Positions 27,457-59,965 of a stretch of DNA of 64,000 nucleotides are shown in pieces (the stretch's first letter is position 1; the number at the start of each line of letters is the position of its first letter). Position numbers and translations under genes: made by a program. Where the stretch lies: positions 1-64,000 of IMG/VR virus record IMGVR_UViG_3300032242_003291; one strand, 5' to 3'. The notes beneath the pieces were generated by a model, which did no database searches, was not told the origin of the DNA, and worked only from the letters and a program-made list of their open reading frames with translations.

Positions 27457-27490
27457 GTTTGTGTTTCGTTCTCCCCTTATTATTAAATAC

Positions 27491-27943
27491 TTACTTGCTC
27501 AAGTCAAAATCCAAATACTCGTAAGTTAATTTCCTGTTTGAAAAAATGTCAGTCAACTCTCTTAAGACATCTTTCAAAAATGGTCGTACATCAACCGTAT
27601 AACGAACTTTCGGTGGAAATAATTTTCCGTCAAAAATTCTATGACAAATTGTCTGTTCTCCTACCTTAACAAAAAGGTTAAAAACTTCAGGTCCATCAGT
27701 GAACGATGTGTTCATGATACTTGGGTCGCTCTCAATCGAGCTTCTGTTATCCATCATATAGATAACTGTTTTCATCTTTAGATAATACTGAAGTTCTTCT
27801 TTTAAAGACTTCATGAACTCATACAACTCTAAAGAGTTTTTTGCCTTTGGGTTGAACCCTCTAACGTTGAAGAATCTTTGAACAACGATGTTATCGTTAA
27901 GTGTCAAAAGAAACTCCATTTTGGTGCTGTCCATTTCTTTCAT
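27491..27943 (-). CDS. Hypothetical protein, 150 aa
   Basis: ORF filling the gap in the replication operon; no motif recognised. Confidence 0.6.
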   Translation of the reverse strand: MKEMDSTKMEFLLTLNDNIVVQRFFNVRGFNPKAKNSLELYEFMKSLKEELQYYLKMKTVIYMMDNRSSIESDPSIMNTSFTDGPEVFNLFVKVGEQTICHRIFDGKLFPPKVRYTVDVRPFLKDVLRELTDIFSNRKLTYEYLDFDLSK

Positions 27944-27963
27944 AGCGTTTAATTTGTGTTTTT

Positions 27964-29693: not shown

Positions 29694-29725
29694 TTTGTTA
29701 AATTAGAGGTGATAAAAATTGTTTC

Positions 29726-35900: not shown

Positions 35901-38900
35901 CATAAATTTCAGATTTACTTTGGTCACCACTTACAGCACTTGATATAACTTTCGCAGGTAGCTGTTGTTGATTTGGTAATTTTAATCTAACTCCCGCCAA
36001 CACTAAATTCAAGAAATTATTTTGTAGTTCAGTTTCAGAATTCAAATATAGTCTAAGTTGATTTTTGAATTGTGCAGCACTTAATTGTGGTGATTCTAGT
36101 TTTCTAGCTGCATACATTTTAATTAACGGTGCCAATATAACAACGTTATTTACACTAAATTCAATATCATTATCAACAAAAAAGTCAGTGATGTACGAAC
36201 CTGTAGAACTGTATGTCACACCACTTATTGTTGAGAACCCTACTTCAGTTTCTAAGGCAAACCACGCGTCGGGATAGTTAATTTTAGATTGGCTTAACAA
36301 AACATTTCCACCTTTTGTGGGTAAACTACCAACAACATAATGTTTGAAAACAATTGGGTCAGTTATTACAGGAGTACCCAAATAAGATAAGTAAGAATCA
36401 AATACTCTTCTTTTGTATTTTGATGGATTACCATTCTTAAATAAAATGTCATACTGTAAAAATGCGGTCAACTCATTTTTCACAAATTCATTTTGTGTGT
36501 TAATTGTATTTTGGAAAAATTCTAAATCTCCTTGTCCACTTGGAGGTGCTGGTACAGTCATTATACTTCTTAATAACGATTGGAAGTTTCTGAAGTTAGC
36601 ATTTGGATTTGTAGTCGATGTATTGTACTGAGCACTATCTTGAGTTGTATCCGCGTTTGTTATTGGTTTACAGAAATTCAAAAACTCTTGTTCAAATTTA
36701 TCCAAATCTCTTTTTTCAAAAACTCCAAAGATATCTTCTATCTTAGAGTAATCATCAGTAGTCAATAACTTGAATGGTGATTGGTCTGTTGTTTTAGGGT
36801 CAATATGGTTAATGTATTCATATGGTGTTGGCATAACAATTTGATTATTATCAAAATAACCAAAGTTTGGTGTTGACCAAATGGTTCTCACAGAACCGTT
36901 ATACATACTTGTATTGTTAGTCAAGTTCACAACCGTTTGTGGTGCTGAGGTTACATTGATAACACATTCATCTATTGTTTGATTTATTTGAGAACCAAAT
37001 GATGGAACAATAAAATATTTGTTACCTTTTGTATTTGTTTTCGGGTCGCAATTTGAAGTAATTAACTCTGTGTCAGGTAATAGTACTGACCAAGTTTTTA
37101 ATATCAAATTTTTAGAATCTTGTTTCAACCCATTGATTTTTGAATCAGGGAAACTAAATATTTTTACTCCCGAATCAATACTTTTTTGGATGTCTGAATT
37201 ATTATATCCTGTGTATAATTCATATCGATTGAAGAACACGTTAAAGTCGTTCATCAGTTGTGGGTAAAATCCTGTATTGATTGTTATAATATCATTACTT
37301 TCTTGTTGGAGAACAATACTTTCCTTTTGACCTTGATAAACAAAATCATAGGTTTGAGTTGTTGAACTAAGAACAGGACTATAATTTACAGTATATTCAA
37401 AGTTTTTCCAAACATTCGTTAATATATCTACACCAGACTCTTTGTATTTTTTATATCTATACCAAATAGAACCTAACTTAATCATCCAAGCGTATGGTAT
37501 TTTATGAATGGCTCCAAACTTGTTAAAACAAGAAGATATAAAATCTAATTCGGACATTGTTGTTCCATCCAAATTTTTATATCTTTCACTCAAAGAAGCT
37601 AATGGTAAAGAATTCAAAAACAAATAAGCTGCTTGTACAAATGGATACGGTGAATTACTTCTAATTCCTTGTACACCAACTTGAATTGAATTTACAAAGT
37701 ATGGTGTATTCAATAAAGAAGTAGTTTTTGTATAAGGTAATCCCCCCGTCAACAAAGTTGCTATTGATGCTGTTGGCTGATTGTGTACTGGCGATACGTA
37801 ATTGCAATTACCTTCCGTTAGTGCAAAATTATTTGGTGTTCTCAATGTATAAAAAGCAGTTAAGCCATAACCATTCTTTACATTTGTTAGTGCATCTATT
37901 GTTGGGTTAGCGTAGTTAGTGTACGAGAAGTTTGTGACAGGTCTGTTATAAGTAAAATTATAAACATCATTAAAATTTGAAATTATCTTTCTTGGTTCAA
38001 AAACCGTTAAAGATTTTTTTGTACTATAAACTTCGTTGTTTTGAGTTTTTCCCCCATCAGGTAAGTTATTCAAACACCAATTTGGGTCCGAAAATGGTAA
38101 TACATCAACAATTAATTTATCGTTGGTCGCAACTGCAATTAAATTTTTCAAAGCTGCTGAGTCTGTGTGCATCTGTGGTATTTGACCTAATTCAAGTGTA
38201 CTAAGGATTGCTGTTGGATTTTCTGTTATTGTTCTGATATATGGTGTGACAAAGAAATCTCTTATAAAGTCTTGGTAGGATTTACCTGTACCTCCGTTTG
38301 AAAAATTTTCAAGATTTTGTATATAATTCTGTGCATTCAAATCATAGTTTTTTAGTTTCAAACTAAGATATGGTGCACTAATATTAATACTATCGTAAAT
38401 GTTATTAACCTCAGCTTCCGTGTTCAACTTAATCAAATCATTTATTTGATTTGAGTTGGCTCTAATCAATCCTGAATAATGAGATGTTAGAAATTGTCTT
38501 TCCCAAATTTCATAAAAGAATTTTAATTCTTCTTTATTCAGATATGTTAATCCTGCAGACGGGAACTCGATTGCATTAATATTAATATTATTAGTATAAT
38601 TTTGATTTTGTAACGTATCGGGTACTTCAGGGGCGTTGAATTTTTTTGTAAGACCTTTCAAATATTCCTCGACAAACTCAACCTCAGGCCATTTATCATA
38701 TAGATAACCTTGTGTTAAATCTGAAACTGAAGGGTCTCCGATATATTTCAATTGAAATCTACCTTTTTTATCTTCAGGTGTTTCAACAAAAAATTGAGGC
38801 CATGGATAAATTGGAATTTGAGAATAATCATAGTTTGAATTATCTGATAATGATTGTGGTGTAACTGGAAGGTTATCTCTACTATCTGAACTTTGTGCCG

Positions 38901-40719: not shown

Positions 40720-41035
40720 AATAATAAAAATGATTTTCTACCGCTGCCTTATAATCTTGTAAAGATGGTAGTAGAGGAAATGGAATAATCAATATAGCAC
40801 CATCATAAATATAGTTTTCAAGTCCTCCAAACTTAGGATTGGCTTGTAATATTAACCAACCAAAATATGGTGAATTATAAAATTCTTGTGAAACTCTATC
40901 TAATCTACTTTTAGCAACTTTATATATGTAAGCCTTATCAGTTGTTTTTTGTGGTAAGTTTACAAAAGGGACAACTGTTTGTTCACCATTAAGTAAAAAT
41001 TGACTATATCTATTCCAATACTGTGATGCCGCCAT
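40709..41035 (-). CDS. LysM/gpX-like baseplate protein (T4 gp53 / P2 gpX type), 108 aa
   Basis: SRLDRVSQEFYNSPYFGWLILQANP...GAILIIP pattern. Confidence 0.75.
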   Translation of the reverse strand: MAASQYWNRYSQFLLNGEQTVVPFVNLPQKTTDKAYIYKVAKSRLDRVSQEFYNSPYFGWLILQANPKFGGLENYIYDGAILIIPFPLLPSLQDYKAAVENHFYYYGR

Positions 41036-44000
41036 TAGTTAAGTTTTGCCTTTGAGATGAAACTTCCGAAACCTGAAATTCCGTTAGGGTCGTTCCATGT
41101 TAATTTATTTGTATTTTGGTTTCCTGTTGCACCTAATCCTTTAATCAAATTTTCTTGGGCTGTTTTATTTGCAACATTACTTACAGGTTGTGAGTTATAA
41201 GTAAAAACCCTCTTCTTGGTATCAAAAGGAGTATAAATCAAATATTTTTTAAGTTTATCTTTTTCTAAATTATTTATAAATTCTGTTGTAATATTTGTTT
41301 CAGTATTGAATGCTGGTTTTGCTATTTTATCCCAATATGCATCAAACTGAGTTTCAATATCATCTTGACCTTTTCCAATAATTGAACTATTACCAATTAT
41401 ATTACCAATAAGTGCTTTTTTGAAGGTTTCATATTTTTTACTATCAGTAACATCATTAGATATTAACATATAAACTCTTCTAAAAATTCTGTCATTAAAT
41501 AAATCAGTTTTACTGAATGGATTGAAAACATCACTTGTTTTTAGTTGATTAGTTGTTCCGTCGTTTTGGAGTGGGAACACAAATGGTGCAGAATATTCTT
41601 GTTTATCACCCGAATAAATAAATTTAGTTTCTGTTGATATTGTATCATTAAACGCAATTAAATCTTGTTGGACTTTTGTAACGTCGTTAATTAATTCAAC
41701 TAATGTGTCTGATGCTCCGTTTGAAGATGTTGCAACATCTTTTGTACCTAACGTTACATAAACTTTTACTGGTCCTGATTTAGATTGTAATCCATCTGTA
41801 CCACTATTTGCAGTTCCAGGATATGTTATTGTATTAACTCTAGCGAGTGTTTGTATATATCCCTGTTCTATGTTAACTAAATCTTGAATTGTTTTATATA
41901 CAGGTGTTTGGTATGATGATTTTTTACCATTCAAAAAATTAACATAATTATCTTTAACAGTTTGAATCAATCTAGAAGAAAAATTCTTTGATGTATTAGA
42001 TATAAATTTGATAAATCCTTCGTCTCCTTTTGAAATATTTTCCGTCAACGTTGTGAATATTTCATCAACTCTAGATTGTAATCCTGTTGGTTTTCCAAAA
42101 ATTTGAACGTCAGGGGTATTTGTTAAAAGATTTCCTTTATAATAATTTCTTGATACCATCCACTGTTGGCGCATTGCATTATTGTATTGACTTAAAACTT
42201 CTTTGTTTTTATTCAAGATATTTGTAAAATATGTTTGAGAGTCCACAACAACTTTAGTCATAAAGTCACCATAACTTATCGTCCCTGTTTCACCAGATGC
42301 TTGTATATTTGAAGTTATTATTGAACCTATGGTTGCATTATTACTCTGACCTGCACTTGGTGCCGCCTGATTTAATGCTGGTGGACCAGGAGGGTTTGTT
42401 CCTTGTAAGAACTGTTGGTCTAAGACCGCTAAAAATTCTTCTTTATCGGTAGAATCTGCTCTATCATCATAAATTTCTGTGTTAGCATAATAGTTGAATG
42501 TTAAAGCATTTTGTAACTTATCAATCGACTCTTTTAATCCACTACCTCCAACAAAATTGAATGCCATGGTTACATTTGCAATCATTGGTTGAACTCCAAT
42601 ACCTTCTGGATTTATATCTAACTCCTCATAAGTGATGCCTAAGGTTGTTGGTATTATCTTTGTATTATAAAAGTCACCAACTCGCAATATTAAAACAGGA
42701 GGTGCACCGAAAGATGTATTAGTTGCTTCATTATATTGTAATACAGTTGAGCCTCCAATATCTTTGATAGTTGGTATTGTGTCACCAGGTCTCATACATT
42801 GTTGTAAGAATGTTAATCTGGTATTTAATCCTTCAGGAGTCATTGAGTGAAACGCTGGTTGAAAAAACTTCAACTTTTCTCTCAAGTTATCATAAACCAT
42901 TGGACTAGCTTCTTTTACCGTTTCAAAATAATCACATTCAGATAATAAAGACCTTAAAACAAATTTAGTGATATTGTCTCTTGGCTTCCAAGTTTTTTCG
43001 AGTTCAGTAGTTTTAATAGTGTCTGTTACAACATCATTTTTTGTTACCGTTACGTAATTTGGCGTAGGGTCTACTGTTGGTTGTTTAAGTGTTGAATGGA
43101 TGTTACTAATGTAGGCCCTTCTACACGCCATTGCATTTGTTGTATAAATTTGATGAGAAATTGCTTGGGTATCACCTCCAACGGCTTGCCCGTCATTATC
43201 GGTGCAATTTACAGTTGTACCTGGAATAAATGCTTTTTTTGCACTATCAAATTGTAATACTTGAGCATTTTCACCAAATGCTGTTCCTGACTTAAGTATT
43301 AATCTTTGTTTTCCAACAAAAGTTGCGGTATTAGTATTGTCTGTAAAAAATTTAATTAATGATTTAATTCTTCTATCCGCTAGTTCTCTATTATAAGACT
43401 GTGTTGCAGGTGCAGAACAAGTCGCATCTATTGTTATTGTTATACTACCAATTGGATATTGTGTTAGTTGTTTATTCAAATCTAAAGCCAAATCATTCAA
43501 AGTATTATAGTTTGGTGTAACAACACTATCAAAAAACGTACCTAGCTGAGCACCGTTTGGTTTGCTGGTATATGTAGTTGTTTCACCAGTATATTCATTA
43601 TATTCGTAAGTATACCCTGGTATTGTAGTTGATTTTTTGGGGTAATCGTTGCTAAAATATCCCGCAACGTTATTGTATTTTTTCCAATAATCATCGTTTG
43701 TAGTTGCTTGTGCGTTTTGGTCTCCACCACTATTAGGGTTATTAAATCCTGATTGAATTGTTTCTTTGGTTACAATTAATTGTTCTCTTGTTAATTCTTT
43801 TGAAGTAATTGCAGTTTGAAGTAGGTATAAATCATTTGGGTTTACAGTATAATATTTCTTGGCTAACTCATAAATGTCATACTTTCTACATCCCGCAAAG
43901 AATGAATCCAAGATTGAATTAACTCTTTCTTTATTTGACTCATTACTAAGTACTTTATTAACAATTGTATTAAGAATTGAAGGGTGGTCTACAACTATTT

Positions 44001-46068
44001 TCCAAGTTAGAGAACCTCCTCTTGAAGTATTCTTATACGTATATATTGGCTCAGGTCTTCCCAAGAAATCACTAGTGTTCCAGTTTGCCGTAACCGATTC
44101 TGTGAATGTCAATCCGTATGGTGGGAACCACATAACTCTACCACCGTTTGGACCTCTTTCACAAATTGATAAATCTGAAGCTGTGAACCCAGGTGTGTTT
44201 GATGTTCTCCAAGCAAGGTTTTCAATTGAGAACATATACTTCTTAGCATAAGCAGCGTTTGTACTACTACCACCAGGTCCATTAATAAGGTTAGTGGAAC
44301 TTTGTCCACCTTCTTGTTTGTTAGGAACAATGTTTAAGTTATATGTGTTGTCAAGAACAGAGTTACTAAATCTTCTACCGTTAACCGTAATACCATCAAC
44401 TTTTTGTAAATTTCTGTAATTCAAATAAGGTATGTCTTTTGCAAACACTCTACAATATTCTGTACCAACTTCTTGACCAATGTTACCTGTATAGGTAATC
44501 ACTCTAGAACCCTTTGTAAGCTCTTTATAACCGTCATTAAAGACCTTACTTACTTGGTCAATAGCATTACCAGCATGTTGTAATCTTTTCGCCCCTTGAG
44601 GTTGGCTATCAATAATTCTTTGAGTCTTATCTAATATTGAACCATCCTTGAATGTATTATTAGTTGACTCCGTTGAGTTATATGATGATGGTTTGTTATT
44701 CGATTGATTAACAATTACCCCACCAACACCAACAGTGAAACCAGCATTCTCTTTGTACTTTGGCGAAACCCATGTAAATCCACCTTCAATACCTCCACCG
44801 TTACTATAGGTAGGTCCATTAGCACCCAATCTGATTGATTGACTTGGTCCTTCGTAAAGTTGTGCTAACTCAGATGGTCCAAATACTGGTGACTTTTGAG
44901 GTACGCCATATGAGTTGATTGGTTGTGAACCTGCAGGTGAGAAAATATTTGATGGTTCACTATTAACTGAACCAATGTAGTAGTTAGAGTTACTTGTTGT
45001 TGAACCAACGAGTGCTCCACCTAATCTATCAAATAAAGTTCTTTCAAAATATGGCTTATATCTATTGTAATCAATGTTCCCAAACAATCTAGATTTTTGT
45101 CCACCACCCATGTTGTTATACATGATTTGTGAACCTGTATTACCAGCACCTAACAAACCCGTTACTAAATTACCTAACGTACTTTGTTTGAAAGCATTAT
45201 TAAGTTGTTGTATTGTTGTAGGTTGTCCTGAATTAATAGATGGGTCAAAATATGAACCAGGTATTTCAGATACAGGTAAAATACTACCCGCAAGTCTTAA
45301 AGCAAAATCTGTCGCAGCTAAAATTGGATTTGATGGTACTGTAATTGTATAGTTAGGTTCAATTAAAGGAACTCTACCTGTTACCAAATTGAGAATATCA
45401 GTACCACTTCTAACATTAAACACATTAGCCTTAGCCAATGTTTCAAGATACACTTGACGAGCAATTCTTTTCTGGAATCCGTCTTTTAACACTTTAGCAC
45501 CCAAACGAGCAATAAATGAGTCTTGGCTTAATAATCCATTACTTCCTTGTGGGTCAGGAGAAAGTAAAATTGATACAGGAGTATAACTTGAACCAACGAG
45601 TCCTGCGGGATATGGTTGTCCGTTACCTTGTCTATCTTGGTCTACTCTAACAGTATCTAAAGATGAAAAAGATTCCGCAGAATCAAATACATTCAATCCA
45701 TCAGCATACGCATTTAATGGTCTCCAATATCTAACAGCGTCATATCCTTCAGCAATTATGTGAGCATCTTGTTGTCCTGGTCCATATTCACCCTGATTGG
45801 ATATTGTATTCATCAACCCGTTTGGGTCAGGAACTTGTCGATATCCACCCTCAGCACCCCACTCATTCAAAGGATATAACTTATTAGCAAACGTTGGTTC
45901 GTCAATCAATTGGTCAGGACTGTCCTGTACCGATATGTCTGATTGTTGATATTCGTATGTAATAGGTGGGGATGGTTTGTTTGGAGACTTAGCATAAGGG
46001 GTTAAATTTCTTACAATAAGTTTTTTTCTAAAACCATCTGAACTAATATAGTCTAAAGGACTTGGCAT
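41035..46068 (-). CDS. Tail tube initiator-like (gp48/gp54-type) protein with OmpA-like insert, 1677 aa
   Basis: WFPPYGLTFTESVTANW...FLGRPEPIYTYKNTSR tube-like fold; second tube-like segment LRVGDFYNTKII; OmpA-like YNRELADRRI...CRR; directly after the tape measure. Confidence 0.6.
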   Translation of the reverse strand: MPSPLDYISSDGFRKKLIVRNLTPYAKSPNKPSPPITYEYQQSDISVQDSPDQLIDEPTFANKLYPLNEWGAEGGYRQVPDPNGLMNTISNQGEYGPGQQDAHIIAEGYDAVRYWRPLNAYADGLNVFDSAESFSSLDTVRVDQDRQGNGQPYPAGLVGSSYTPVSILLSPDPQGSNGLLSQDSFIARLGAKVLKDGFQKRIARQVYLETLAKANVFNVRSGTDILNLVTGRVPLIEPNYTITVPSNPILAATDFALRLAGSILPVSEIPGSYFDPSINSGQPTTIQQLNNAFKQSTLGNLVTGLLGAGNTGSQIMYNNMGGGQKSRLFGNIDYNRYKPYFERTLFDRLGGALVGSTTSNSNYYIGSVNSEPSNIFSPAGSQPINSYGVPQKSPVFGPSELAQLYEGPSQSIRLGANGPTYSNGGGIEGGFTWVSPKYKENAGFTVGVGGVIVNQSNNKPSSYNSTESTNNTFKDGSILDKTQRIIDSQPQGAKRLQHAGNAIDQVSKVFNDGYKELTKGSRVITYTGNIGQEVGTEYCRVFAKDIPYLNYRNLQKVDGITVNGRRFSNSVLDNTYNLNIVPNKQEGGQSSTNLINGPGGSSTNAAYAKKYMFSIENLAWRTSNTPGFTASDLSICERGPNGGRVMWFPPYGLTFTESVTANWNTSDFLGRPEPIYTYKNTSRGGSLTWKIVVDHPSILNTIVNKVLSNESNKERVNSILDSFFAGCRKYDIYELAKKYYTVNPNDLYLLQTAITSKELTREQLIVTKETIQSGFNNPNSGGDQNAQATTNDDYWKKYNNVAGYFSNDYPKKSTTIPGYTYEYNEYTGETTTYTSKPNGAQLGTFFDSVVTPNYNTLNDLALDLNKQLTQYPIGSITITIDATCSAPATQSYNRELADRRIKSLIKFFTDNTNTATFVGKQRLILKSGTAFGENAQVLQFDSAKKAFIPGTTVNCTDNDGQAVGGDTQAISHQIYTTNAMACRRAYISNIHSTLKQPTVDPTPNYVTVTKNDVVTDTIKTTELEKTWKPRDNITKFVLRSLLSECDYFETVKEASPMVYDNLREKLKFFQPAFHSMTPEGLNTRLTFLQQCMRPGDTIPTIKDIGGSTVLQYNEATNTSFGAPPVLILRVGDFYNTKIIPTTLGITYEELDINPEGIGVQPMIANVTMAFNFVGGSGLKESIDKLQNALTFNYYANTEIYDDRADSTDKEEFLAVLDQQFLQGTNPPGPPALNQAAPSAGQSNNATIGSIITSNIQASGETGTISYGDFMTKVVVDSQTYFTNILNKNKEVLSQYNNAMRQQWMVSRNYYKGNLLTNTPDVQIFGKPTGLQSRVDEIFTTLTENISKGDEGFIKFISNTSKNFSSRLIQTVKDNYVNFLNGKKSSYQTPVYKTIQDLVNIEQGYIQTLARVNTITYPGTANSGTDGLQSKSGPVKVYVTLGTKDVATSSNGASDTLVELINDVTKVQQDLIAFNDTISTETKFIYSGDKQEYSAPFVFPLQNDGTTNQLKTSDVFNPFSKTDLFNDRIFRRVYMLISNDVTDSKKYETFKKALIGNIIGNSSIIGKGQDDIETQFDAYWDKIAKPAFNTETNITTEFINNLEKDKLKKYLIYTPFDTKKRVFTYNSQPVSNVANKTAQENLIKGLGATGNQNTNKLTWNDPNGISGFGSFISKAKLN

Positions 46069-50396: not shown

Positions 50397-53300
50397 TTAG
50401 ATATTTTCAAATGAAGCACCTGTTGGTGTGATAAAGAATTCGATATCAATGAATTCAAGTGCTTTAGTTGGTTTAAGGTATATTTTACCTGTAAGTCTAT
50501 TCGCATCTAAATCTTCAGGTGAAGACGATACTGTTACACGGAAATCATAAAGACCTCTGTCTCTTCTGATACCATCTAAGATAGGGTTAACACTATCTAA
50601 GAATTGTTGTCTAACGATTTGGTCATTTTGTTCAAATAACAATCTAATAGCTACAGCTGAAATTAACTTACGAGCTTGTAATAACAATCTTCTAACATTT
50701 AATCTGTTAAGAGCCGTATCAGCAACTTGTAAAGTTTTGTTACCCCAAATTACTGTCCCAACGTCAGAGAATGTTGCAATTGGGTTGATTCTACCTTGAT
50801 AAAGTGTATCTCTATCTTCTTGAGTCAACTTAACTCTTGCTTTGATTGAATTCACAAGACCTCTAGTGTAACCCGCCGATGCGAACCAAGGGAATGCGAT
50901 GTTATCAGTCAATGCTAAGTTTCTACAAACTTCACCTGTTGGAGGTAAGTAGATTTGTGTATTGTTTACAGTATCTCTTGTTAATATCCAAGGATAGTAA
51001 GTAGCAGTATAGTTAGAGTCGATTCCAGTATTATCAAGGTTATCGACCGCTTCTTGAGGGTAAATAATTGCTTGAGGGTCAGTAGAATCTGGTAAGTACA
51101 TGTTATAGTCAGGAGTTGTTGTGATATACACAGAGTCAGCTCTTGAATATTGTATCATTTGAATTGCTTCTTCAACTAAATTAGAGTTATAAACATAATC
51201 GATTCCACCTGTTGCAAAAACGTTAATGTTTGTCGCTTCAGGGTTAGCGAATGTTAAAATACCAAGTAAGTAAGCGTAGTAGTCAGTGTTAGCAAAGTCT
51301 TGAGTATTGTTTTGAACAACAATTCTCTTGAATAATCCATCACCTGTTGCCGTTGGGTATCTTACTGAAGCGGCTGCTCCAGCTAAATAACCTGATGCCC
51401 CTAATTGGAATCTATCTTCGTTAGTTCTATATTCTCTGTAGATATCCCATCCGTCAAATCCACCTGCGAAACATACTGTGTATTTTCTTGAGTAAATGAA
51501 GTAATAAGGATTTTCTTGTGTTGCTGGGTCAGTTCTGAAATCTGCAACTCCACACTCAAATGCTGTCTCACCACTTGTATCATAGAAGTTACCAATTGTT
51601 ACAACAGTTGCTCCTGAGTCCATATGGAAACCTTTAGATAAAACGTTCCAAGCAATTGAGTCAGTCGCTGTTGCCCAAGCTTGTTGTGGGTTTTGCTTTC
51701 CTTTATAATCTAAGAATGATTCGTCAATACCATATTCAGATGAGAATCCTAAATAAGCTCTTCTAACAATATTACCTGGTGACTCAACAGTGTTTGGTCC
51801 ACCATAAGGACTACCGAATGGAGGGTCAGCAATTACTTCACCTGGGTAGTAATACTTTGTTTTATATTTTGGATATGGTGCTGGATTAGACATGCTACCA
51901 TATTGTCTTTGAATATAACCGTAAAATCCACATGGGATAGAATCAACAGGTGCGTTGTCTGCCATTTCTAACATAACGTATTTTGAAAGAAGTGCAAACT
52001 CACCATTTGATGTACCAATTTTCTTAGCAACGTAGTTGTTAGAAGCTGGGTCCATATTACAATTAGTGAATTTTTCGATAACAACTGGATTTGCATCTGT
52101 ATCATAGAAATTTCTAACCAACACATCAAAACTCATATTATTAAAAGATAAGTTAGCAATTGATACTTTAATTTCATAGTTTGCAGAATCACCATCTGAT
52201 ATTGAAATAAACTTAAATAAGTTATAAACTTTATTACCTCTCAACTCAGATACTAAGTATGGTGTTTCAGGTGATTGATATTTTTCTAAATTCCAAGCTA
52301 TTGAAGAACTATTTTGACTTCTAGCATCAGGTAGTGCAACCAACTCACAATTTAATCCTTTGATATAACCTTGGTTGAAAGCATAATTTAAAGTACCTGG
52401 ATAAATTTCTTCAACAAACACAGGAACTTCATATCTTGATTTACCGAAGTTATCAACACCTAATACCTTTGTTATATATTTTGAATCTGCAGCACCTAAA
52501 GAAGCCTCAAGTGCAAAATTGTTACCTTCGATAGTGACACCTGATAATAAGAAGTGTGCATAAGGTGATTTAGTAATACCTGAGTATTGACCACTACAAA
52601 CCATTTGTAAATCTGTTAATCCACTTACTTGATAAATTGGACCGTGACTCATACTTGATGAACTGTTATCATAAAGTGAAATACCTCTTGAACGAAGTGT
52701 TGCAATAACCATGTTATTGAATTCAGGATATGCAGAACCCATAAAAGTATTAAGATTACCTGTTAAAGTACCTGTATATTCTCCTGTTGCACCAGTTACA
52801 TAATTAATAATCTCATAGTAAAAAGAATAACCTGAATAATTGTTATCCATGTAGTTATTGAAATTAGCATAATACCAAGGGTCGTTACTATTTGAACTCA
52901 AATCGTTAGTTTCTAAATTAGGTGAATCACAAAGATATTCGTTAACAACTGTACTATAGCTAGATGTTAAACTCCAATAATCTGAACCAGGGATTGAACC
53001 ATAAACATATGCTGTTGTAGCAGATAAGGTAGGTGTATCATAAACAAAACTTGTACTTTTTTGAAAGTCATTGAATAATGTTGATGTGCTTCCGTCACTT
53101 AAAACATATTGTACGTATAAATTTGGTTGGATGTAAGTTGTAAATATTGAATCAGATGAAGTGAACTGGAAAGTTCCTCCTGTCACATTACCACTGAAAT
53201 CAATAGTAAATGTTAAACCTGTCATATCAACATCAACAGTTGTTGGGTCTACGTTAGATGTTACTCTAATGCTCCATGATGGACCTGCATCATAACCTGA

Positions 53301-53606
53301 TAAACCTAATACTCTTGTTACGAATAATTGGTTCGATTGTTGTAAATAAGATTTTGCGATATACGCAGCTTCATATTTTGGGATTTGTGTATTCACAAAT
53401 TTAACAGGTTCTGTCCCACCAAAGTAGGCTTGGAATTCGTCGTAATTTGTTATAAAAACAGGTTCGAAGGCTGGACCTTTAATTGTCTCACCAACTAAAC
53501 CTAATGTCGTTACACCCACACTCTGTGCTACGAACGATAAGTCCGTTTCTGAAGTGTATACGCCAGGTGATACGAATACTTTTTGATTTGCTTGTGCTGT
53601 TGCCAT
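50397..53606 (-). CDS. Contractile tail sheath protein (T4 gp18-like), 1069 aa
   Basis: FVSPGVYTSETDLS N-terminus; PWFASAGYTRG, LYQGRINPI, WGNKTLQ, RLNVRRLL, KPTKALEFIDIEF C-terminal domain. Confidence 0.95.
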   Translation of the reverse strand: MATAQANQKVFVSPGVYTSETDLSFVAQSVGVTTLGLVGETIKGPAFEPVFITNYDEFQAYFGGTEPVKFVNTQIPKYEAAYIAKSYLQQSNQLFVTRVLGLSGYDAGPSWSIRVTSNVDPTTVDVDMTGLTFTIDFSGNVTGGTFQFTSSDSIFTTYIQPNLYVQYVLSDGSTSTLFNDFQKSTSFVYDTPTLSATTAYVYGSIPGSDYWSLTSSYSTVVNEYLCDSPNLETNDLSSNSNDPWYYANFNNYMDNNYSGYSFYYEIINYVTGATGEYTGTLTGNLNTFMGSAYPEFNNMVIATLRSRGISLYDNSSSSMSHGPIYQVSGLTDLQMVCSGQYSGITKSPYAHFLLSGVTIEGNNFALEASLGAADSKYITKVLGVDNFGKSRYEVPVFVEEIYPGTLNYAFNQGYIKGLNCELVALPDARSQNSSSIAWNLEKYQSPETPYLVSELRGNKVYNLFKFISISDGDSANYEIKVSIANLSFNNMSFDVLVRNFYDTDANPVVIEKFTNCNMDPASNNYVAKKIGTSNGEFALLSKYVMLEMADNAPVDSIPCGFYGYIQRQYGSMSNPAPYPKYKTKYYYPGEVIADPPFGSPYGGPNTVESPGNIVRRAYLGFSSEYGIDESFLDYKGKQNPQQAWATATDSIAWNVLSKGFHMDSGATVVTIGNFYDTSGETAFECGVADFRTDPATQENPYYFIYSRKYTVCFAGGFDGWDIYREYRTNEDRFQLGASGYLAGAAASVRYPTATGDGLFKRIVVQNNTQDFANTDYYAYLLGILTFANPEATNINVFATGGIDYVYNSNLVEEAIQMIQYSRADSVYITTTPDYNMYLPDSTDPQAIIYPQEAVDNLDNTGIDSNYTATYYPWILTRDTVNNTQIYLPPTGEVCRNLALTDNIAFPWFASAGYTRGLVNSIKARVKLTQEDRDTLYQGRINPIATFSDVGTVIWGNKTLQVADTALNRLNVRRLLLQARKLISAVAIRLLFEQNDQIVRQQFLDSVNPILDGIRRDRGLYDFRVTVSSSPEDLDANRLTGKIYLKPTKALEFIDIEFFITPTGASFENI

Positions 53607-55486: not shown

Positions 55487-57238
55487 ATGGAAGTATCAAT
55501 AGAATCAAAGTCGTTAACATTATTAGAAACCTATGAAGGGGGAAACAACTACCTTTTAGAGTTGAAGAGAAAATCTCAACTCAATAAGAAGTTTTACCCA
55601 ACAAGGAGTCAAGCGGAATACATAATTAACAACCACGACAAACAACCAAAGGTTGCAAAAAAGTGGGTTGTTCTTGATGCATATTTTGCTCAAAAACTTG
55701 CGGATGATAGATTACTCACGGTTATCCCTGAAAAGGTATGGGTGGAAAAACTATTGGCTGAAAAGGAAAAGGCATTTCATATTTGGGGTAAGATAAATGA
55801 AAACCAAGAGCTTCACGATTTTTGGTTACCCAAGGCGTCAATCATAAAAGATAATACAGTTAAAGACGTGGTTATCAATTATGAAAAATATTCTAAACGT
55901 CCCCCATTAACACATCAAAAAGAAGCGGTACAAAAACTTGTTGAGAATAAAAAGTTTATCTTGGCTGATGATATGGGTCTTGGTAAAACTACATCAACTA
56001 TAATTGCTGCTCTCGAAACAGGTGCGAAGAAAATCTTAATTATCTGTCCCGCTACTCTGAAGATTAATTGGAAAAGGGAGATTGAAAATTACTCAGAAAG
56101 ACCAATCTTTATTGCAGAAGGAAAACAATTCTCAACTGAACACGATTTTGTTATTATAAACTACGACATTATAAAAAATTTCCATGACCCTAAAAAGAAA
56201 GATGAATCGCAAATTCTTGCTTCCAATTTTGATTTGGTTGTTATTGATGAAGCACACTATATCAAAAATGCTCAAGCCCAACGTACAAAACTAATCAACG
56301 ATATTGTAAAGAAAGTTGACCGTTTATGGTTACTGACTGGAACTCCCATGACTTCCCGTCCAATTGATTATTATAACCTTTTAAGCCTAATTGATTCGCC
56401 TGTTGCCAAAAACTGGATGGCTTATGTTATAAGATATTGCCAAGGATACCAATTCAAAGTTGGTCCAAGAAAAGTGTGGAATGTTATGGGAGCATCCAAT
56501 TTGGAAGAGCTTAGGGATAGGACCGTAGGACTTACCCTCAGAAGGTTGAAAGAAGACGTTTTAGACCTTCCAGATAAAATTATTACACCAGTGTACCTAA
56601 GACTAAAGTCCAACGAGTATGAGGAGGTAATGGGTGAATATTACAATTGGTATGAAAAGAATCCTGAAGAATCTAAATCACTTACAGTTCAATTCACAAA
56701 ACTAACAAAGGTTAGACAAATCATTGCCGATGAGAAGATTGCTCAAACAATAGAACTTGCTGAGAATATCATAGAACAAGGTAAGAAGGTAATCATCTTT
56801 TGCAACTTTACAGATTCACTTAATAAAATTTGTGAACACTTTGGAAAAAGTGCGGTTAAAGTTGATGGTTCAATGTCTAAACCTGAAAGACAAAATAGTG
56901 TTGACGGATTCCAAGAAAACGAAAAGATTAAAGTTTTTGTTGGAAACATAAAGGCCGCTGGTGTTGGTTTAACATTAACTGCTGGTGAAGCGGTTATTAT
57001 GAATGACCTATCATTTTTACCGTCAGACCACTCACAAGCAGAAGACCGAGCTTATAGATACGGTCAAAAAAATAACGTACTAGTTTATTACCCCATCTTT
57101 GAAAATACAATCGAAGGAGTCATCTACGACATACTTGCAAATAAAAAACAAGTTATCTCAACAGTCTTAGGTGATAACCAAAACACAGTCGACGCAGCAG
57201 AGGAAATATTAAAAAGAATCCACGAATTGCGTCGTTAA
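55487..57238 (+). CDS. SNF2-family (HARP/SMARCAL1-like) helicase/translocase, 583 aa
   Basis: LADDMGLGKT, DEAH, LTGTP, QAEDRAYRYGQ motifs. Confidence 0.9.
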   Translation: MEVSIESKSLTLLETYEGGNNYLLELKRKSQLNKKFYPTRSQAEYIINNHDKQPKVAKKWVVLDAYFAQKLADDRLLTVIPEKVWVEKLLAEKEKAFHIWGKINENQELHDFWLPKASIIKDNTVKDVVINYEKYSKRPPLTHQKEAVQKLVENKKFILADDMGLGKTTSTIIAALETGAKKILIICPATLKINWKREIENYSERPIFIAEGKQFSTEHDFVIINYDIIKNFHDPKKKDESQILASNFDLVVIDEAHYIKNAQAQRTKLINDIVKKVDRLWLLTGTPMTSRPIDYYNLLSLIDSPVAKNWMAYVIRYCQGYQFKVGPRKVWNVMGASNLEELRDRTVGLTLRRLKEDVLDLPDKIITPVYLRLKSNEYEEVMGEYYNWYEKNPEESKSLTVQFTKLTKVRQIIADEKIAQTIELAENIIEQGKKVIIFCNFTDSLNKICEHFGKSAVKVDGSMSKPERQNSVDGFQENEKIKVFVGNIKAAGVGLTLTAGEAVIMNDLSFLPSDHSQAEDRAYRYGQKNNVLVYYPIFENTIEGVIYDILANKKQVISTVLGDNQNTVDAAEEILKRIHELRR

Positions 57239-57280: not shown

Positions 57281-58819
57281 ATGAAGAAAGTAGAAGAAAA
57301 AATCCAACAACTCGAAACACAAATACACGAAAACCACGTTAACAGAGAAACAGAGTTGTTGATTACAGAAATGAAGAAAATAGGAATAGAAAAGTTACCT
57401 TATTCTTACTCAGCCCTCAAACAGTTCATTGACTCCGAAACGATGAACTTTCATTATAACAAACATTATAAAGGGTACGTGGACAAATTAAATGATGCAC
57501 TCTCAAAAAAGAAATACGGAGATTTAGAGTTAGAACAAATCATTAAGAACATAAGTCGTTACGACAAAACAATCAGAAACAACGCAGGTGGAGCATTCAA
57601 TCACGCATTGTTTTGGAACATGTTGACTCCAACACCAAAGAAACTCGAAGGGGAACTTTACAAGAAAATCACAAAACAATTTGGAAGTCTTACCGCATTT
57701 AAAAAGAAATTTGATGCAGTTGCCAAAGACAGATTTGGTTCAGGTTGGGTGTGGTTGGTACTAACAGCAAAGAATACTTTGAAGATTATGTCAACACCAA
57801 ACCAAGACAATCCATTAATGAATGTGATAGAAGGTGGGGGTTTTCCTTTATTAGGTTTAGACCTTTGGGAACATGCTTACTATCTAAAATATAGAAACAA
57901 AAGAGATGAATATATTTTAAACTTTTGGAAAGTTGTGAATTGGGATTTTGTTTCCAAATTATATGAAATGAGAACTGAAACAAAATTAACAGAATCTTTA
58001 GAATTGAGTGGTTTAATTACTGAGTCTGTTGATACTAAGTTTTGTGATGCAAAAGAAGTCCTTTTCTACAAAGATTTAATCAATAACCCAAAGATAAAAA
58101 GAATTTATCAAGATGGTATTACTAGTGTATTGAAAAAAGTATTTCACCAATTTTGGGTGGATAGTACAAACAAAGAGATGTCAGGGTTTTATGGTGTTGA
58201 ATCTAAAGAAGGAAGGTCATTATTAAATAATCTAAATACAAATTTTAACGCATTTTGTTTATTAGGTAAGGCGGTTAATAGACAGATTGAAAAGATTGGT
58301 CGACAAGATAAGATGTTTGATTTCAGTAAGTCTGAAAATAGAACAGTCAAAGAAGTATCAAGATTTATTAATGCGTTAGACCACTTCAAAACAGATATTT
58401 TTACAAAACACAATGAAGATTTTATTAATATCATTAAGGTACTGAAAAAATTATGGGACAGAGGACAAAAGTCAGAGGACAATGTTTTGAAAAAAGTGGA
58501 AGATTATTTTGAAGGTAGAGCTAAAATTGAAAAGGTTGGTGGTCACGGACAAAAAGTGGATGCATTCAAAGGAGTTGATTTGATTATCAGTGTTGATGGT
58601 AAAACTCACACGGCACAAGTTAAACCGTATTCAATGACTAAAGTTGACGGAACTAATGTAGAACTATATGATACAGGGAATGTAAAACCATATAATGTTG
58701 ATTGGTTAATTTTTATACAAACAAAAACTAACAAGATATTAATATTTAACAACGACCCAATTAGTAGTGAAAATCAATACGTATTTAAGTTAAATTCACT
58801 TAAGCACGAAATAGAATAA
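57281..58819 (+). CDS. sod: Fe/Mn superoxide dismutase fused to a C-terminal PD-(D/E)xK-like domain, 512 aa
   Basis: All four ligands present (FHYNKH, NHALFW, DLWEHAYY), GG and PNQD typical of Mn/cambialistic enzymes; ~280 extra C-terminal residues with DAFKGVD...QVKP. Confidence 0.85.
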   Translation: MKKVEEKIQQLETQIHENHVNRETELLITEMKKIGIEKLPYSYSALKQFIDSETMNFHYNKHYKGYVDKLNDALSKKKYGDLELEQIIKNISRYDKTIRNNAGGAFNHALFWNMLTPTPKKLEGELYKKITKQFGSLTAFKKKFDAVAKDRFGSGWVWLVLTAKNTLKIMSTPNQDNPLMNVIEGGGFPLLGLDLWEHAYYLKYRNKRDEYILNFWKVVNWDFVSKLYEMRTETKLTESLELSGLITESVDTKFCDAKEVLFYKDLINNPKIKRIYQDGITSVLKKVFHQFWVDSTNKEMSGFYGVESKEGRSLLNNLNTNFNAFCLLGKAVNRQIEKIGRQDKMFDFSKSENRTVKEVSRFINALDHFKTDIFTKHNEDFINIIKVLKKLWDRGQKSEDNVLKKVEDYFEGRAKIEKVGGHGQKVDAFKGVDLIISVDGKTHTAQVKPYSMTKVDGTNVELYDTGNVKPYNVDWLIFIQTKTNKILIFNNDPISSENQYVFKLNSLKHEIE

Positions 58820-58837: not shown

Positions 58838-59965
58838 ATGTCAGTAATACCAGAACCAGAAAGGTCAAAAATTTATACAAGAGTCAAGCACCAATTGGGT
58901 GCACCTTTAAGAAGTGTTGAACTTGAAGATGAAATGTTAGATTCATTGATGGAATTATCTATTCAAGACTACGAAGAGTATGTTTTACAGTGGTTAATTG
59001 ATAGTCAATGGGTTAACCTTGTCAATCTGAACATGAGTGAAAAATCTGTTGCTCAAGCACTTATAACAAGAACAATGGATTTTGAACAGCAATTTGCATA
59101 CTCATATTCGAAAATTGCTGGTCTTCAAACTACGGGTCCATGGGTTTTAAAGAAAGATTATTTCACATTAGAAAAAAATGTTCAGACATATGAAATTCCT
59201 GCTGGTAGAGAAGTTAATGAATTGTTATGGTTCTCTGACCAACCTTGGACTGCGTATGGTCTTGGGGGTGTCGGTGGTTTTGGATTCGGTGGAATAGGAT
59301 TAGGTGCAGACCAAGCGGGATACGCTCAAATGGGTAATCAAGGTTCTTATTTTATGATGTCAGGTTTCGATTACTTAATAAGAATGCAAGAAGCCAATGT
59401 ACTTAGTAGAATTTTAGGAGGGTCAATGACATACAGAATTACAGGATTACCTGATGGTAAAAAGTTAATTCACTTAATGAATACACCTGGAGGTAAATTT
59501 AATTGGTCAATGTATAATCAATATGTTGGTAAAGCTGTTTGGTATTGGTATTATGAAACAACACCTGACAGTAGAGCGGATTGTTTGAAAAATAATCCCG
59601 ACGTTATCAAACTTCCAACTGACGTTCCATTAGAAGAGTTAACATGGGAGAACTTGAACACCCCTGGTAAACAATGGGTCAGAAGATGGTTTACCGCATA
59701 TGCTAAAGAAACTTTATCAAGAGTTAGAGGTAAATTCAGTGGTAATCTTAAAACACCTGATTCGGAATTAACTATGGATTATACGAGTTTATCGACAGAA
59801 GCTAAAGACGAAAAATCTAAACTTCTTGAAGAATTAATAGGTGCTGAAGGTTGGTTAACAAGGTTAAGACCTGAAAAGGTTATGGAAAGAGAAGCACAAA
59901 TTGCAGAAAACCTAAATAAACAAATGAAGTTCAGAGCAATGCCTCGTCAAATTTATGTAATATAA
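58838..59965 (+). CDS. Neck / head-tail adaptor protein (T4 gp13-like), 375 aa
   Basis: KHQLGAP...VELEDE, WVRRWFTAYAKETLSRVRGKF motifs; TATTTAT 5 nt upstream. Confidence 0.7.
   Translation: MSVIPEPERSKIYTRVKHQLGAPLRSVELEDEMLDSLMELSIQDYEEYVLQWLIDSQWVNLVNLNMSEKSVAQALITRTMDFEQQFAYSYSKIAGLQTTGPWVLKKDYFTLEKNVQTYEIPAGREVNELLWFSDQPWTAYGLGGVGGFGFGGIGLGADQAGYAQMGNQGSYFMMSGFDYLIRMQEANVLSRILGGSMTYRITGLPDGKKLIHLMNTPGGKFNWSMYNQYVGKAVWYWYYETTPDSRADCLKNNPDVIKLPTDVPLEELTWENLNTPGKQWVRRWFTAYAKETLSRVRGKFSGNLKTPDSELTMDYTSLSTEAKDEKSKLLEELIGAEGWLTRLRPEKVMEREAQIAENLNKQMKFRAMPRQIYVI

What the first reader, a model, noticed from the sequence alone, without database searches (positions are those of the whole stretch)
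57281..58819. Superoxide dismutase fused to a restriction-endonuclease-like domain
Seen: a complete Fe/Mn SOD (to about 57960), a short linker, then ~280 aa with helical repeats and KVDAFKGVDLIISVDGKTHTAQVKPY, a D...D...QxK arrangement like PD-(D/E)xK nucleases. Known: Fe/Mn SODs are usually ~200-aa single-domain dimers or tetramers, and phage SODs are more often Cu/Zn. Inference: the SOD could protect phage DNA from ROS, be targeted to DNA by the second domain, or serve as an oligomerisation scaffold for a nuclease or anti-defence effector. I do not know of this fusion being described.
Basis: partly seen in the sequence, partly recalled or inferred. Interest (0 to 1): 0.7.

Follow-up and report, generated by a model that had tools for sequence, protein, structure and literature searches.

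The report
Phage superoxide dismutase fused to nuclease
A widespread group of giant freshwater phages carries one 512-residue protein that joins an apparently active manganese superoxide dismutase to a previously undescribed, fast-evolving DNA-cutting module, an enzyme combination I found described nowhere.

Summary

E399, D427, D433, Q446, K448 and Y471 are invariant or nearly so in 75 diverse relatives.

The fusion is real. More than 160 independent IMG/VR loci carry it in frame, and contigs from three studies span it. All domains are under purifying selection (dN/dS 0.03-0.16).

The window is from a 317-kb T4-like jumbo myovirus of freshwater. The module is the core gene: it always lies between an SNF2 helicase and a gp13-like neck gene. 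Some close relatives carry it without SOD and have no SOD elsewhere on the record.

The module has no Pfam, PHROG-function or PADLOC assignment. It diverges much faster than its neighbours (39% versus 81-87% identity), and the genome holds a second paralog.

Most likely it is a bifunctional enzyme: a DNA endonuclease, possibly the missing junction resolvase, that carries an accessory SOD. The nuclease's role and the reason for the fusion are inferred.

The parts
57281..58819 (+). Whole gene: 512-aa SOD-nuclease fusion protein, stop codon included
   Evidence: ORF list; 100% self-match in the own genome with no internal stops; the same in-frame gene in 80/80 IMG/VR loci
57281..57376 (+). N-terminal extension (aa 1-32), predicted as a single long amphipathic helix that cellular SODs lack
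   Evidence: Full-length AF2 model has helix 2-32 at low confidence (pLDDT about 57); conserved in the family (E17, E23, L27, T29-G35 invariant in A1); dN/dS 0.11
57386..57958 (+). Fe/Mn superoxide dismutase domain (Sod_Fe_N aa 36-115, Sod_Fe_C aa 123-226), Mn-type
   Evidence: Pfam. The best NCBIfam model is SOD [Mn]. The best PDB sequence matches are MnSODs, 6gsc/5a9g at E about 1e-61. Metal ligands H58, H108, D194, H198, gateway H62/Y66, Q175 and E197/Y201 are invariant in 16 divergent fusions. dN/dS is 0.034.
57959..58030 (+). Linker helix (aa about 227-250) joining the last SOD helix to the module; low model confidence
   Evidence: Full-length model: helix 221-247, pLDDT<50 at 233-250. 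Unfused homologues begin aligning at query residues about 226-233.
58031..58444 (+). Helical domain of the module (aa about 251-388), unknown fold, with the conserved Asn-rich motif R312-S-x-L-N-x-L-N-T-N-F322 (nt 58214-58246)
   Evidence: AF2 model of aa 235-512: helices only up to model residue 175, pLDDT 81-96 over most of it. S313 and N316 are 92% conserved, N321 80% and N333 77% in 75 homologues. No convincing structural match.
58445..58816 (+). PD-(D/E)xK-like nuclease domain (aa 389-512). Proposed catalytic residues are E399 (58475-58477), D433 (58577-58579), Q446 (58616-58618) and K448 (58622-58624). D427 (58559-58561) and Y471 (58691-58693) are also invariant.
   Evidence: Foldseek and VIA-align matches to Hjc, I-Ssp6803I, NhoI, SPARDA DREN, RecU, PvuII and DpnI cover model residues about 155-278. 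AFDB and ESM Atlas clusters are named PD(D/E)XK, Mrr, DUF4365, NOV_C.
55487..57238 (+). Upstream gene of the same strand block: SNF2-family helicase (583 aa), always adjacent to the module
   Evidence: Pfam SNF2-rel_dom + Helicase_C; PHROG DNA helicase; adjacency kept in all related loci, fused or not
58838..59965 (+). Downstream gene: gp13-like neck/head-completion protein (375 aa), 18 nt after the fusion's stop
   Evidence: 61% identical to the L163 protein that carries PF26809 Phage_T4_gp13; PHROG head-tail adaptor Ad2; distant homologue inside the structural module of Microcystis phage Mel-JY01

Best explanation
The gene encodes one polypeptide with two enzymes.

(1) Residues 36-229 are a catalytically competent manganese-type superoxide dismutase. 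It was acquired once by an ancestor of this clade of freshwater T4-like jumbo myoviruses, probably from a Bacteroidota-like host.

(2) Residues about 250-512 are the phage's own conserved module: a helical domain followed by an Hjc/Mrr-like PD-(D/E)xK endonuclease domain. That domain would bind a divalent metal through E399, D433 and Q446 and use K448 to cleave DNA.

The module is the core gene. It is always encoded directly after an SNF2 helicase and directly before the gp13-like neck gene. SOD is an optional N-terminal add-on that rides on it.

Shown: the architecture, its conservation, purifying selection on every part, intact catalytic residues in both enzymes, the nuclease-like predicted fold, the fixed synteny, and the dispensability of SOD.

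Inferred, about 0.8: the module is an active DNA endonuclease.

Inferred, about 0.35-0.4: its job is to resolve or debranch recombination and replication intermediates, with the SNF2 helicase acting as branch-migration motor, before or during packaging. This would be the role that EndoVII (gp49) or gp4 play in T4. The genome has UvsX-like recombinase, exonuclease, DnaB-like helicase and PolB but no recognisable resolvase.

Inferred, weak: the fusion serves to co-express and co-localise SOD with the phage's DNA-processing or head-completion machinery, rather than being needed for nuclease function.

The overall confidence given (0.6) is for the bifunctional SOD + active endonuclease reading with SOD as accessory, not for the specific resolvase role.
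For: SOD:
- Pfam domains, MnSOD best hits, all ligands and second-shell residues invariant in 16 fusions whose SOD domains are 63-93% identical.
- dN/dS 0.034.
- Phage SODs form one clade with 100/100 support, and the nearest cellular sequences are Bacteroidota at 50-56% identity.

Nuclease:
- The AF2 model has pLDDT 84.
- Foldseek against PDB, AFDB clusters, Swiss-Prot and BFVD, and two VIA-align runs including one independent of Foldseek, put almost only PD-(D/E)xK enzymes at the top. They cover the whole 125-residue domain.
- By the model's secondary structure, E399 lies on the first helix, D433 at the start of the second strand, and Q446-x-K448 on the third strand. The D-to-Q spacing of 13 matches the D33-E46 spacing of P. 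furiosus Hjc as I recall it; those Hjc residue numbers come from memory and no tool checked them.
- These residues are invariant in 75 homologues that share only 20-40% identity overall.

Core versus accessory:
- Unfused 269-311-aa versions sit at the same locus in near and distant relatives.
- Five records of 34-178 kb with an unfused module hold no Sod_Fe_C.

Resolvase idea:
- Pfam HMMs for Hjc, EndoVII, RuvC, RusA, T7 endo I and TnsA/gp4 find nothing in the 317-kb genome.
- UvsX-like recombinase, exonuclease and DnaB-like helicase are present.
- Iyer et al. 2021 (PMC7824862) note that jumbo phages lacking a known resolvase carry uncharacterised REase-fold proteins, and that Snf2 helicases may replace UvsW.
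Against: - No sequence-based method links the module to any nuclease family. Pfam, NCBIfam, PADLOC and PDB profile searches are all negative, and hhalign against T4 gp4 is insignificant.
- I could not superpose coordinates, so residue equivalence rests on secondary-structure position.
- The canonical acidic residue of (D/E)xK is Gln here.
- Homodimer prediction gave no answer.
- A second paralog in the genome and the module's very fast divergence fit a conflict-related nuclease at least as well as a housekeeping resolvase.
- Absence of known resolvases in a very divergent phage is weak evidence.
- Nothing tested says why SOD is fused.
Confidence: 0.6

Rival explanations
1. The module is a conflict nuclease rather than a replication or packaging enzyme. 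It would degrade host or competitor DNA, or act in defence or counter-defence like Mrr-type or modification-dependent enzymes. SOD would be an unrelated passenger.
For: The module is by far the fastest-diverging segment of the locus: window versus L173 is 39% identical, against 85% for SNF2, 87% for SOD and 81% for gp13-like. There are discrete allelic types among close relatives. A second paralog sits in the same genome. Other N-terminal fusions of 583-1113 aa exist. Structural neighbours include NhoI, Eco15I, DpnI, SPARDA DREN and Mrr-named clusters. The D...QxK variant is, from my own knowledge, typical of Mrr/MspJI-type enzymes.
Against: The syntenic position between SNF2 helicase and the neck gene is fixed in every relative examined. 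Within a type, selection is purifying (dN/dS 0.10-0.16). There are no PADLOC hits, no adjacent methyltransferase or immunity gene was seen in the ORFs around it, and there is no sign of sporadic presence or absence.
Confidence: 0.2
2. The module is a head-completion or virion-associated protein, the functional analogue of T4 gp4. Fusing SOD to it loads SOD into or onto the particle, either to be delivered at infection or to protect packaged DNA.
For: The gene is co-oriented with, and 18 nt upstream of, the gp13-like neck gene and the following 111-aa gene. The block lies inside the tail-sheath/neck region. T4 gp4 is a small REase-fold nuclease required for morphogenesis (Benler 2020, as cited in PMC7824862). 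No TnsA-like gp4 is detectable in the genome. From my own knowledge, virion-packaged Cu,Zn SODs are known in chloroviruses and megaviruses.
Against: There is no detectable homology to gp4/TnsA. Fold matches favour Hjc over TnsA, and gp4 is absent from the top Swiss-Prot matches. The gene is equally adjacent to a replication-type SNF2 helicase and close to PolB. No proteomic data exist.
Confidence: 0.15
3. The C-terminal domain keeps the nuclease fold but is non-catalytic, serving as a DNA-binding or protein-binding anchor. The protein is then essentially a tethered SOD.
For: Gln replaces the canonical acidic residue. No sequence family match exists. PD-(D/E)xK folds are sometimes used as readers, for example the N-terminal domains of NhoI/Eco15I among the structural hits.
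Against: E399, D427, D433, Q446, K448 and Y471 are invariant or nearly so at 20-40% overall identity, which is the signature of an active site. The module exists and is conserved without SOD, so it has a function of its own.
Confidence: 0.07
4. The fusion is an artefact (chimeric assembly, a missed stop or frameshift), or the module is a selfish homing endonuclease inserted next to SOD.
For: The best PDB Foldseek hit is the homing endonuclease I-Ssp6803I. Two related loci show frameshifts (L242, L186).
Against: More than 160 independent in-frame fusions were found, contigs from three studies span the junction, and selection on both halves is purifying. The module is present at the same locus in every relative, fused or not, which is the opposite of a sporadic homing element. 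The L242 break lies in a Lys-codon homopolymer inside SOD, so it is a likely sequencing error.
Confidence: 0.02

Closest known systems
Bacterial manganese superoxide dismutase (SodA; e.g. Sphingobacterium MnSOD PDB 6gsc/5a9g, E. coli SodA 1d5n)
   Same: Both Pfam domains are present over the full length of about 195 aa. The ligands H/H/D/H, gateway His/Tyr, the Mn-type Gln from the C-terminal domain, and dimer-interface Glu/Tyr are all present. Identity to Bacteroidota enzymes is about 50-56%.
   Different: It carries a 35-aa N-terminal helix and a 280-aa C-terminal extension. It is phage-encoded. The phage clade sits on a long stem branch apart from cellular sequences.
Archaeal Holliday junction resolvase Hjc (PF01870; PDB 2wcw, 1gef)
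   Different: There is no HMM match. Gln replaces the second Glu. There is an extra short helix carrying the invariant D427 and an extra beta-hairpin. It is always preceded by a roughly 150-aa helical domain. Dimerisation is not shown.
T4 gp4 head-completion nuclease (TnsA-like, PF08722)
   Same: It is a small REase-fold nuclease of T4-like phages needed late in infection (PMC7824862). The window's gene sits next to head-completion/neck genes, and the genome lacks a canonical gp4.
   Different: There is no detectable sequence relationship (hhalign probability <1%; Pfam). The fold neighbours differ.
Mrr-like and other D...QxK PD-(D/E)xK nucleases (Mrr_cat, DUF4365/DREN of SPARDA, NOV_C, I-Ssp6803I)
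   Same: Fold-level matches. Gln in the (D/E)xK position, which by my recollection is characteristic of Mrr/MspJI-type enzymes.
   Different: No profile match beyond one member at E 0.0045 to Mrr_cat_2. The N-terminal domain is different. The family is purely viral.
Virus-encoded SODs (prophage sodC Cu,Zn SODs; chlorovirus and megavirus Cu,Zn SODs; Fe/Mn SOD listed as a phage auxiliary gene)
   Same: A virus carries a host-derived antioxidant enzyme. Fe/Mn SOD is listed among viral auxiliary genes in Lake Erie bloom viromes (PMC12542629).
   Different: Those are single-domain enzymes, mostly of the unrelated Cu,Zn class (my own knowledge). Here the SOD exists only as a domain of a nuclease-module protein and never as a separate gene in the records examined.

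Membership tests
Fe/Mn superoxide dismutase (PF00081 + PF02777) | Both Pfam domains above gathering score | tested here: met
   81 bits (cut-off 27) and 135.3 bits (cut-off 20.9)
Fe/Mn superoxide dismutase (PF00081 + PF02777) | Four metal ligands (His26, His81, Asp167, His171 in E. coli MnSOD numbering) and gateway His30/Tyr34 | tested here: met
   H58, H108, D194, H198, H62 and Y66 are present and invariant in 16 divergent fusions. The mapping to E. coli numbering is by motif, from my own knowledge.
Fe/Mn superoxide dismutase (PF00081 + PF02777) | Mn-type signature (active-site Gln from the C-terminal domain in NQD; GGxxNH in the N-terminal domain) | tested here: met
   Q175 in STPNQDNP and GGAFNH at 103-108. 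The Mn model scores above the Fe model (196.7 versus 167.2 bits), though below the equivalog cut-off. Top PDB hits are MnSODs.
Fe/Mn superoxide dismutase (PF00081 + PF02777) | Dismutase activity and metal content | not testable with these tools
   Needs purified protein
PD-(D/E)xK nuclease superfamily | Core alpha-beta-beta-beta-alpha-beta fold | tested here: met
PD-(D/E)xK nuclease superfamily | Catalytic Asp at the start of strand 2 and (D/E)xK on strand 3, plus an acidic residue on helix 1 | tested here: met
   D433, Q446-x-K448 and E399 are at those secondary-structure positions and invariant or nearly so in 75 homologues. This is the variant with Gln for D/E. Residue superposition on a solved structure was not possible.
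PD-(D/E)xK nuclease superfamily | Sequence-profile match to a described PD-(D/E)xK family | tested here: not met
   There is no Pfam, NCBIfam, PADLOC or PDB profile hit. Single members reach Mrr_cat_2 and RE_EcoO109I only at E 0.0045.
PD-(D/E)xK nuclease superfamily | Metal-dependent nucleic-acid cleavage | not testable with these tools
   Biochemistry needed
Hjc Holliday junction resolvase (PF01870) | HMM membership | tested here: not met
   No match in the genome at E<=10, nor in hmmscan
Hjc Holliday junction resolvase (PF01870) | Homodimer that cuts four-way junctions | tested here: inconclusive
   The homodimer prediction returned 'no answer'. Junction cleavage is not testable here.
T4 gp4 / TnsA-like head completion nuclease (PF08722) | HMM or profile similarity to gp4 | tested here: not met
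   T4 gp4 matches PF08722. PF08722 and gp4 find nothing in the genome. hhalign A4 versus gp4 gives probability 0.6%.
T4 gp4 / TnsA-like head completion nuclease (PF08722) | Requirement for head completion; virion association | not testable with these tools
   Only gene position next to gp13-like speaks for it
Homing endonuclease (I-Ssp6803I type) | Sporadic presence, insertion into a host gene or intron | tested here: not met
   The module is present at the same intergenic locus in every relative examined

The most novel reading that the evidence does not exclude
SOD is deliberately tethered to the phage's DNA-processing or head-completion machinery. It would then act at the phage genome itself, at replication or packaging sites or inside or on the virion, and shield DNA from superoxide-driven damage in sunlit, oxic fresh water. 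That would be the first DNA- or virion-targeted antioxidant enzyme in a bacteriophage, built on a new, hypervariable family of Hjc-like nucleases that may be the missing junction resolvase of a large uncultured clade of jumbo phages.
Probability: 0.15. Interest if true: 0.75.

Novelty: new variant of a known kind. Interest (0 to 1): 0.55.

Why it matters
Fe/Mn SODs are textbook single-domain enzymes, and viral SODs are treated as simple auxiliary genes. Here, in an abundant and uncultured clade of ~320-kb freshwater phages, SOD occurs only as a domain of a nuclease-module protein. It has stayed fused while the SOD diverged to about 60% identity.

This gives three testable questions:
- whether an antioxidant enzyme is being targeted to DNA or to the particle;
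- what the uncharacterised helical + PD-(D/E)xK family does, given that it is core to these phages, lies beside an SNF2 helicase, has two copies per genome and evolves unusually fast;
- whether it is the unidentified junction-resolving or debranching enzyme of T4-like jumbo phages that lack EndoVII, RuvC and gp4.

It also shows that database labels ('superoxide dismutase') hide more than half of this protein.

Tried and rejected
- Sequence-only routes to name the C-terminal part all failed: Pfam, PHROG function, NCBIfam, PADLOC, PDB profile searches with a close (A2) and a diverse nuclease-only (A4) alignment, tblastn against 50,697 phage records, and hhalign against T4 gp4.
- I first took the ~125-aa hits (P0157, P0175 and others) as free-standing nuclease-only proteins. 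Their contigs are under 1 kb and the frames are open to the contig edge, so they are truncated calls. I dropped that claim. Likewise, many 283-aa 'proteins' start at the internal Met230 of truncated fusions.
- I considered that SOD was inserted inside an older gene, between an ancestral N-terminal helix and the helical domain. The N-termini of unfused proteins resemble the fusion's first helix (7/20 identities), but they align equally well to the linker. This is unresolved and not claimed.
- The apparent split SOD/module arrangement in L242 is a frameshift inside SOD at a Lys-codon run, not a two-gene form.
- Homodimer prediction of the module gave no answer.
- The full-length model gave no reliable inter-domain arrangement.
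- Promoter and terminator scans around the gene were at background level.
- The search for related loci failed with the diverse alignment A3 and with P0146 and P0126. A degenerate DNA pattern for INKLNTNY worked instead.
Full report
**1. The observation**

The window holds an ATG-initiated ORF at 57281-58819 (+) of 512 aa, exactly as reported. Pfam places Sod_Fe_N at residues 36-115 and Sod_Fe_C at 123-226, both far above threshold. Nothing in Pfam matches residues 235-512.

The window is the first 64 kb of a 317,259-bp virus record that CheckV rates 100% complete. The record has about 33% GC. It encodes a tail sheath, baseplate wedge, ribonucleotide reductase, DnaB-like helicase, an exonuclease, a UvsX-like recombinase and a family-B polymerase. 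It is therefore a T4-like jumbo myovirus.

The runs that hold the sequence are freshwater or aquatic metagenomes. The only cultured-phage hit for the neighbouring neck gene is a 25%-identical protein of a Microcystis phage.

**2. The fusion is real**

- A word-indexed search with residues 235-512 returned 161 proteins. Nearly all are 512 aa and carry both SOD domains.
- All 80 IMG/VR loci retrieved with the close alignment contain one uninterrupted 512-codon frame that matches residues 1-512.
- A second scan, aimed at a motif of other module types, gave 107 module ORFs, 81-82 of them with SOD in the same frame.
- More distant phage lineages have fusions of 506-546 aa.
- In run X1 a contig spans 57297-58876 without a difference at depth 77. 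Contigs from two unrelated studies span the gene at about 5-8% divergence without frame-breaking gaps.
- Pairwise dN/dS over 53 distinct 512-codon genes is 0.11 (N-terminal helix), 0.034 (SOD), 0.10 (helical domain) and 0.155 (nuclease domain). dS is near saturation, so the ratios are approximate.

**3. The SOD half**

The best solved relatives are MnSODs: Sphingobacterium 6gsc/5a9g at E about 1e-61, then Deinococcus, Bacillus and E. coli. NCBIfam's Mn model outscores the Fe model.

The metal ligands are H58, H108, D194 and H198. The gateway residues are H62 and Y66. The Mn-type Gln is Q175, in NQD. The dimer-interface residues are E197 and Y201. All are present and invariant in 16 fusions whose SOD domains are only 63-93% identical.

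In a tree with the 79 closest cellular sequences, the 12 phage SODs form one clade (100/100) on a long stem. The cellular neighbours, at 50-56% identity, are almost all Bacteroidota: Chitinophagaceae, Flavobacterium, Pedobacter. This fits one old acquisition. The donor or host inference is soft, because the cellular set was chosen by similarity to the query.

**4. The C-terminal half**

An AlphaFold2 model of residues 235-512 has mean pLDDT 84 and pTM 0.72. It shows a helical domain followed by a beta-rich domain.

Every structural library gave the same answer for the last ~125 residues:
- PDB by Foldseek: I-Ssp6803I, Hjc, SPARDA DREN.
- A Foldseek-independent scan of 48,161 chains: NhoI, Hjc, I-Ssp6803I, RecU (PrfA), splicing endonucleases, HhaI.
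- AFDB clusters named PD(D/E)XK, Mrr, DUF4365, NOV_C.
- Swiss-Prot: Hjc.
- ESM Atlas: PDDEXK_5, NOV_C, Hjc.

Independent support comes from conservation. A profile search of 1.8 billion representatives found 229 relatives. In an alignment of 75 diverse ones, sharing 20-40% identity, the only positions at 97-100% are G395, E399, D427, G431, D433, Q446, K448 and Y471. In the model, E399 lies on the first long helix, D433 at the start of the second strand and Q446-x-K448 on the third. That is the canonical placement of the PD-(D/E)xK catalytic residues, with Gln in place of the second acidic residue.

No sequence method connects the module to a described family. The helical domain has no convincing structural match. 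It carries a strongly conserved R-S-x-L-N-x-L-N-T-N-(F/Y) motif of unknown role.

**5. The module is the core gene and SOD is the accessory**

The module also occurs without SOD, as proteins of 269-311 aa at the same locus (SNF2 helicase, module, gp13-like neck gene). This holds in distant relatives (L163; L205, L224, L294 and others). It also holds in close ones such as L002, L185 and L246, whose flanks are 78-87% identical to the window's. Five records with an unfused module (34-178 kb, 11-60% complete) contain no Sod_Fe_C anywhere. The apparent two-gene form in L242 is a frameshift inside SOD.

The family is viral and also occurs with other, unrecognised N-terminal regions of up to about 830 aa. 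A ~245-aa subfamily lies in a different genomic context. The window's own genome has a second, distant paralog of 423 aa near 176-177 kb (hhalign probability 94%, E 1e-7).

**6. Evolutionary behaviour**

The module is the fastest-changing part of the locus. Identities of the window against two relatives:

| Comparison | SNF2 | SOD | gp13-like | Module |
|---|---|---|---|---|
| Window vs L173 | 85% | 87% | 81% | 39% |
| Window vs L175 | 81% | 80% | 77% | 36% |

L173's module is 59% identical to the unfused L002 protein. In the SOD tree, L173 falls among the window's closest relatives. So the module was either replaced by recombination at about the domain boundary or went through a burst of change. 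Within one type it is under purifying selection.

**7. Likely mechanism**

Shown:
- two intact active sites on one chain;
- a fixed position in a four-gene, same-strand block (SNF2 helicase; 42-nt gap; fusion; 18-nt gap; gp13-like; overlapping 111-aa gene);
- a T4-type recombination toolkit in the genome;
- no match to Hjc, EndoVII, RuvC, RusA, T7 endonuclease I or TnsA/gp4 models.

Iyer et al. 2021 (PMC7824862) make three relevant points. Jumbo phages without a recognised resolvase carry uncharacterised REase-fold proteins reminiscent of archaeal resolvases. Snf2 helicases may stand in for UvsW. T4 gp4 is an REase-fold nuclease needed for morphogenesis.

I therefore favour a metal-dependent DNA endonuclease that works with the adjacent helicase on branched replication or recombination intermediates ahead of packaging. 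SOD would be an optional domain that is co-expressed and co-localised with it.

The rivals are a conflict nuclease (fast divergence, paralogy, Mrr-like neighbours), a gp4-like virion-associated protein that carries SOD into the particle, and a non-catalytic anchor. They are listed with their evidence in the Rival explanations section. I could not test oligomerisation or inter-domain geometry.

**8. Novelty**

Full-text searches found Fe/Mn SOD mentioned only as a viral auxiliary gene and nothing on this architecture. Such proteins are already deposited as 'superoxide dismutase'. So the sequences are public, but the domain combination and the module family are undescribed. I class it as a new variant of known kinds: a classical SOD joined to a new family within the PD-(D/E)xK fold.

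Noticed in passing
G000 (own genome) about 176.2-177.5 kb, minus strand; L169:1312-2583: A second, distant paralog of the helical + nuclease module (423 aa). It keeps the N-K-L-D-T-H-Y, G-D-R-V-E, D...ID and I-Q-V-K motifs (hhalign probability 94%, E 1e-7), so the family is present twice in this phage.
   Followed up: partly
L002:3-3983 (SNF2 helicase ortholog); also L163:589-3495: The SNF2 helicase of close relatives is 1326+ aa (968 aa in L163) because of two insertions of roughly 360 aa. One follows the Walker-A GLGK, the other the DE of the DExH box. Their junctions look like inteins (...THN|T and DE|C...SN|C). The window's copy (583 aa) has none.
   Followed up: partly
window 292-2952 (+), overlapping minus-strand ORFs 923-2110 and 2120-2506: At the very start of the record there is an 886-codon open frame made almost entirely of proline-rich tandem units (PEVPSVPLEPLVP...). 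GC is 0.40-0.47, against 0.33 elsewhere, and the GC skew is strongly negative. The coding strand and function are unclear.
   Followed up: no
window 4111-6069 (-): A 652-aa protein with very long Thr/Pro/Ser linker tracts (TPTPTQTPT...) between globular ends. No PHROG match. It is possibly a fibre or adhesin-like virion protein.
   Followed up: no
window 32965-40719, 41035-46068, 16210-21396, 8675-11653 (all -): Four giant ORFs (2584, 1677, 1728 and 992 aa) have no PHROG family at E<=1e-5.
   Followed up: no
L083 (CAYVBV010000039.1, binned as an uncultured Polynucleobacter MAG): This 15.9-kb contig is a phage contig of the same clade (170-aa gene, SNF2, 517-aa SOD fusion, gp13-like, 110-aa gene, PolB). 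It is either mis-binned or a hint about a host. The nearest cellular SODs point to Bacteroidota instead.
   Followed up: partly
L242 and L186 (IMG/VR loci): The fusion gene is interrupted by frameshifts. In L242 the break is inside SOD at a run of Lys codons (YQNKKR|DEYI). In L186 it is inside the module. These are probably homopolymer sequencing errors, but pseudogenes are not excluded.
   Followed up: partly
window 24078-30709 (-): A replication/recombination block: ribonucleotide reductase (24078-26015), DnaB-like helicase (26074-27456), exonuclease (28707-29693) and UvsX-like recombinase (29726-30709). It is interleaved with structural genes (baseplate wedge 21495-23333; tail sheath 50397-53606).
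   Followed up: partly
window 57734-57964 versus GenBank OR844995.1, OR850395.1, OR846937.1: The only blastn matches of the gene in the phage collection are 70-75% identical stretches of the SOD core. They lie in unannotated records named Staphylococcus phage SA 1306/1298 Kay and Listeria phage LM 4-11-1. These look like host sodA DNA within those records rather than relatives of this phage.
   Followed up: no
L167:6001-9330 (ENA contig) and BFVD A0A8D9CCA0: The module also forms the C-terminus of proteins of about 1110 aa in marine phage-like contigs. Their first ~820 residues match nothing in Pfam or PHROGs. Neighbours include patatin, peptidase M16 and a primase-like gene.
   Followed up: no
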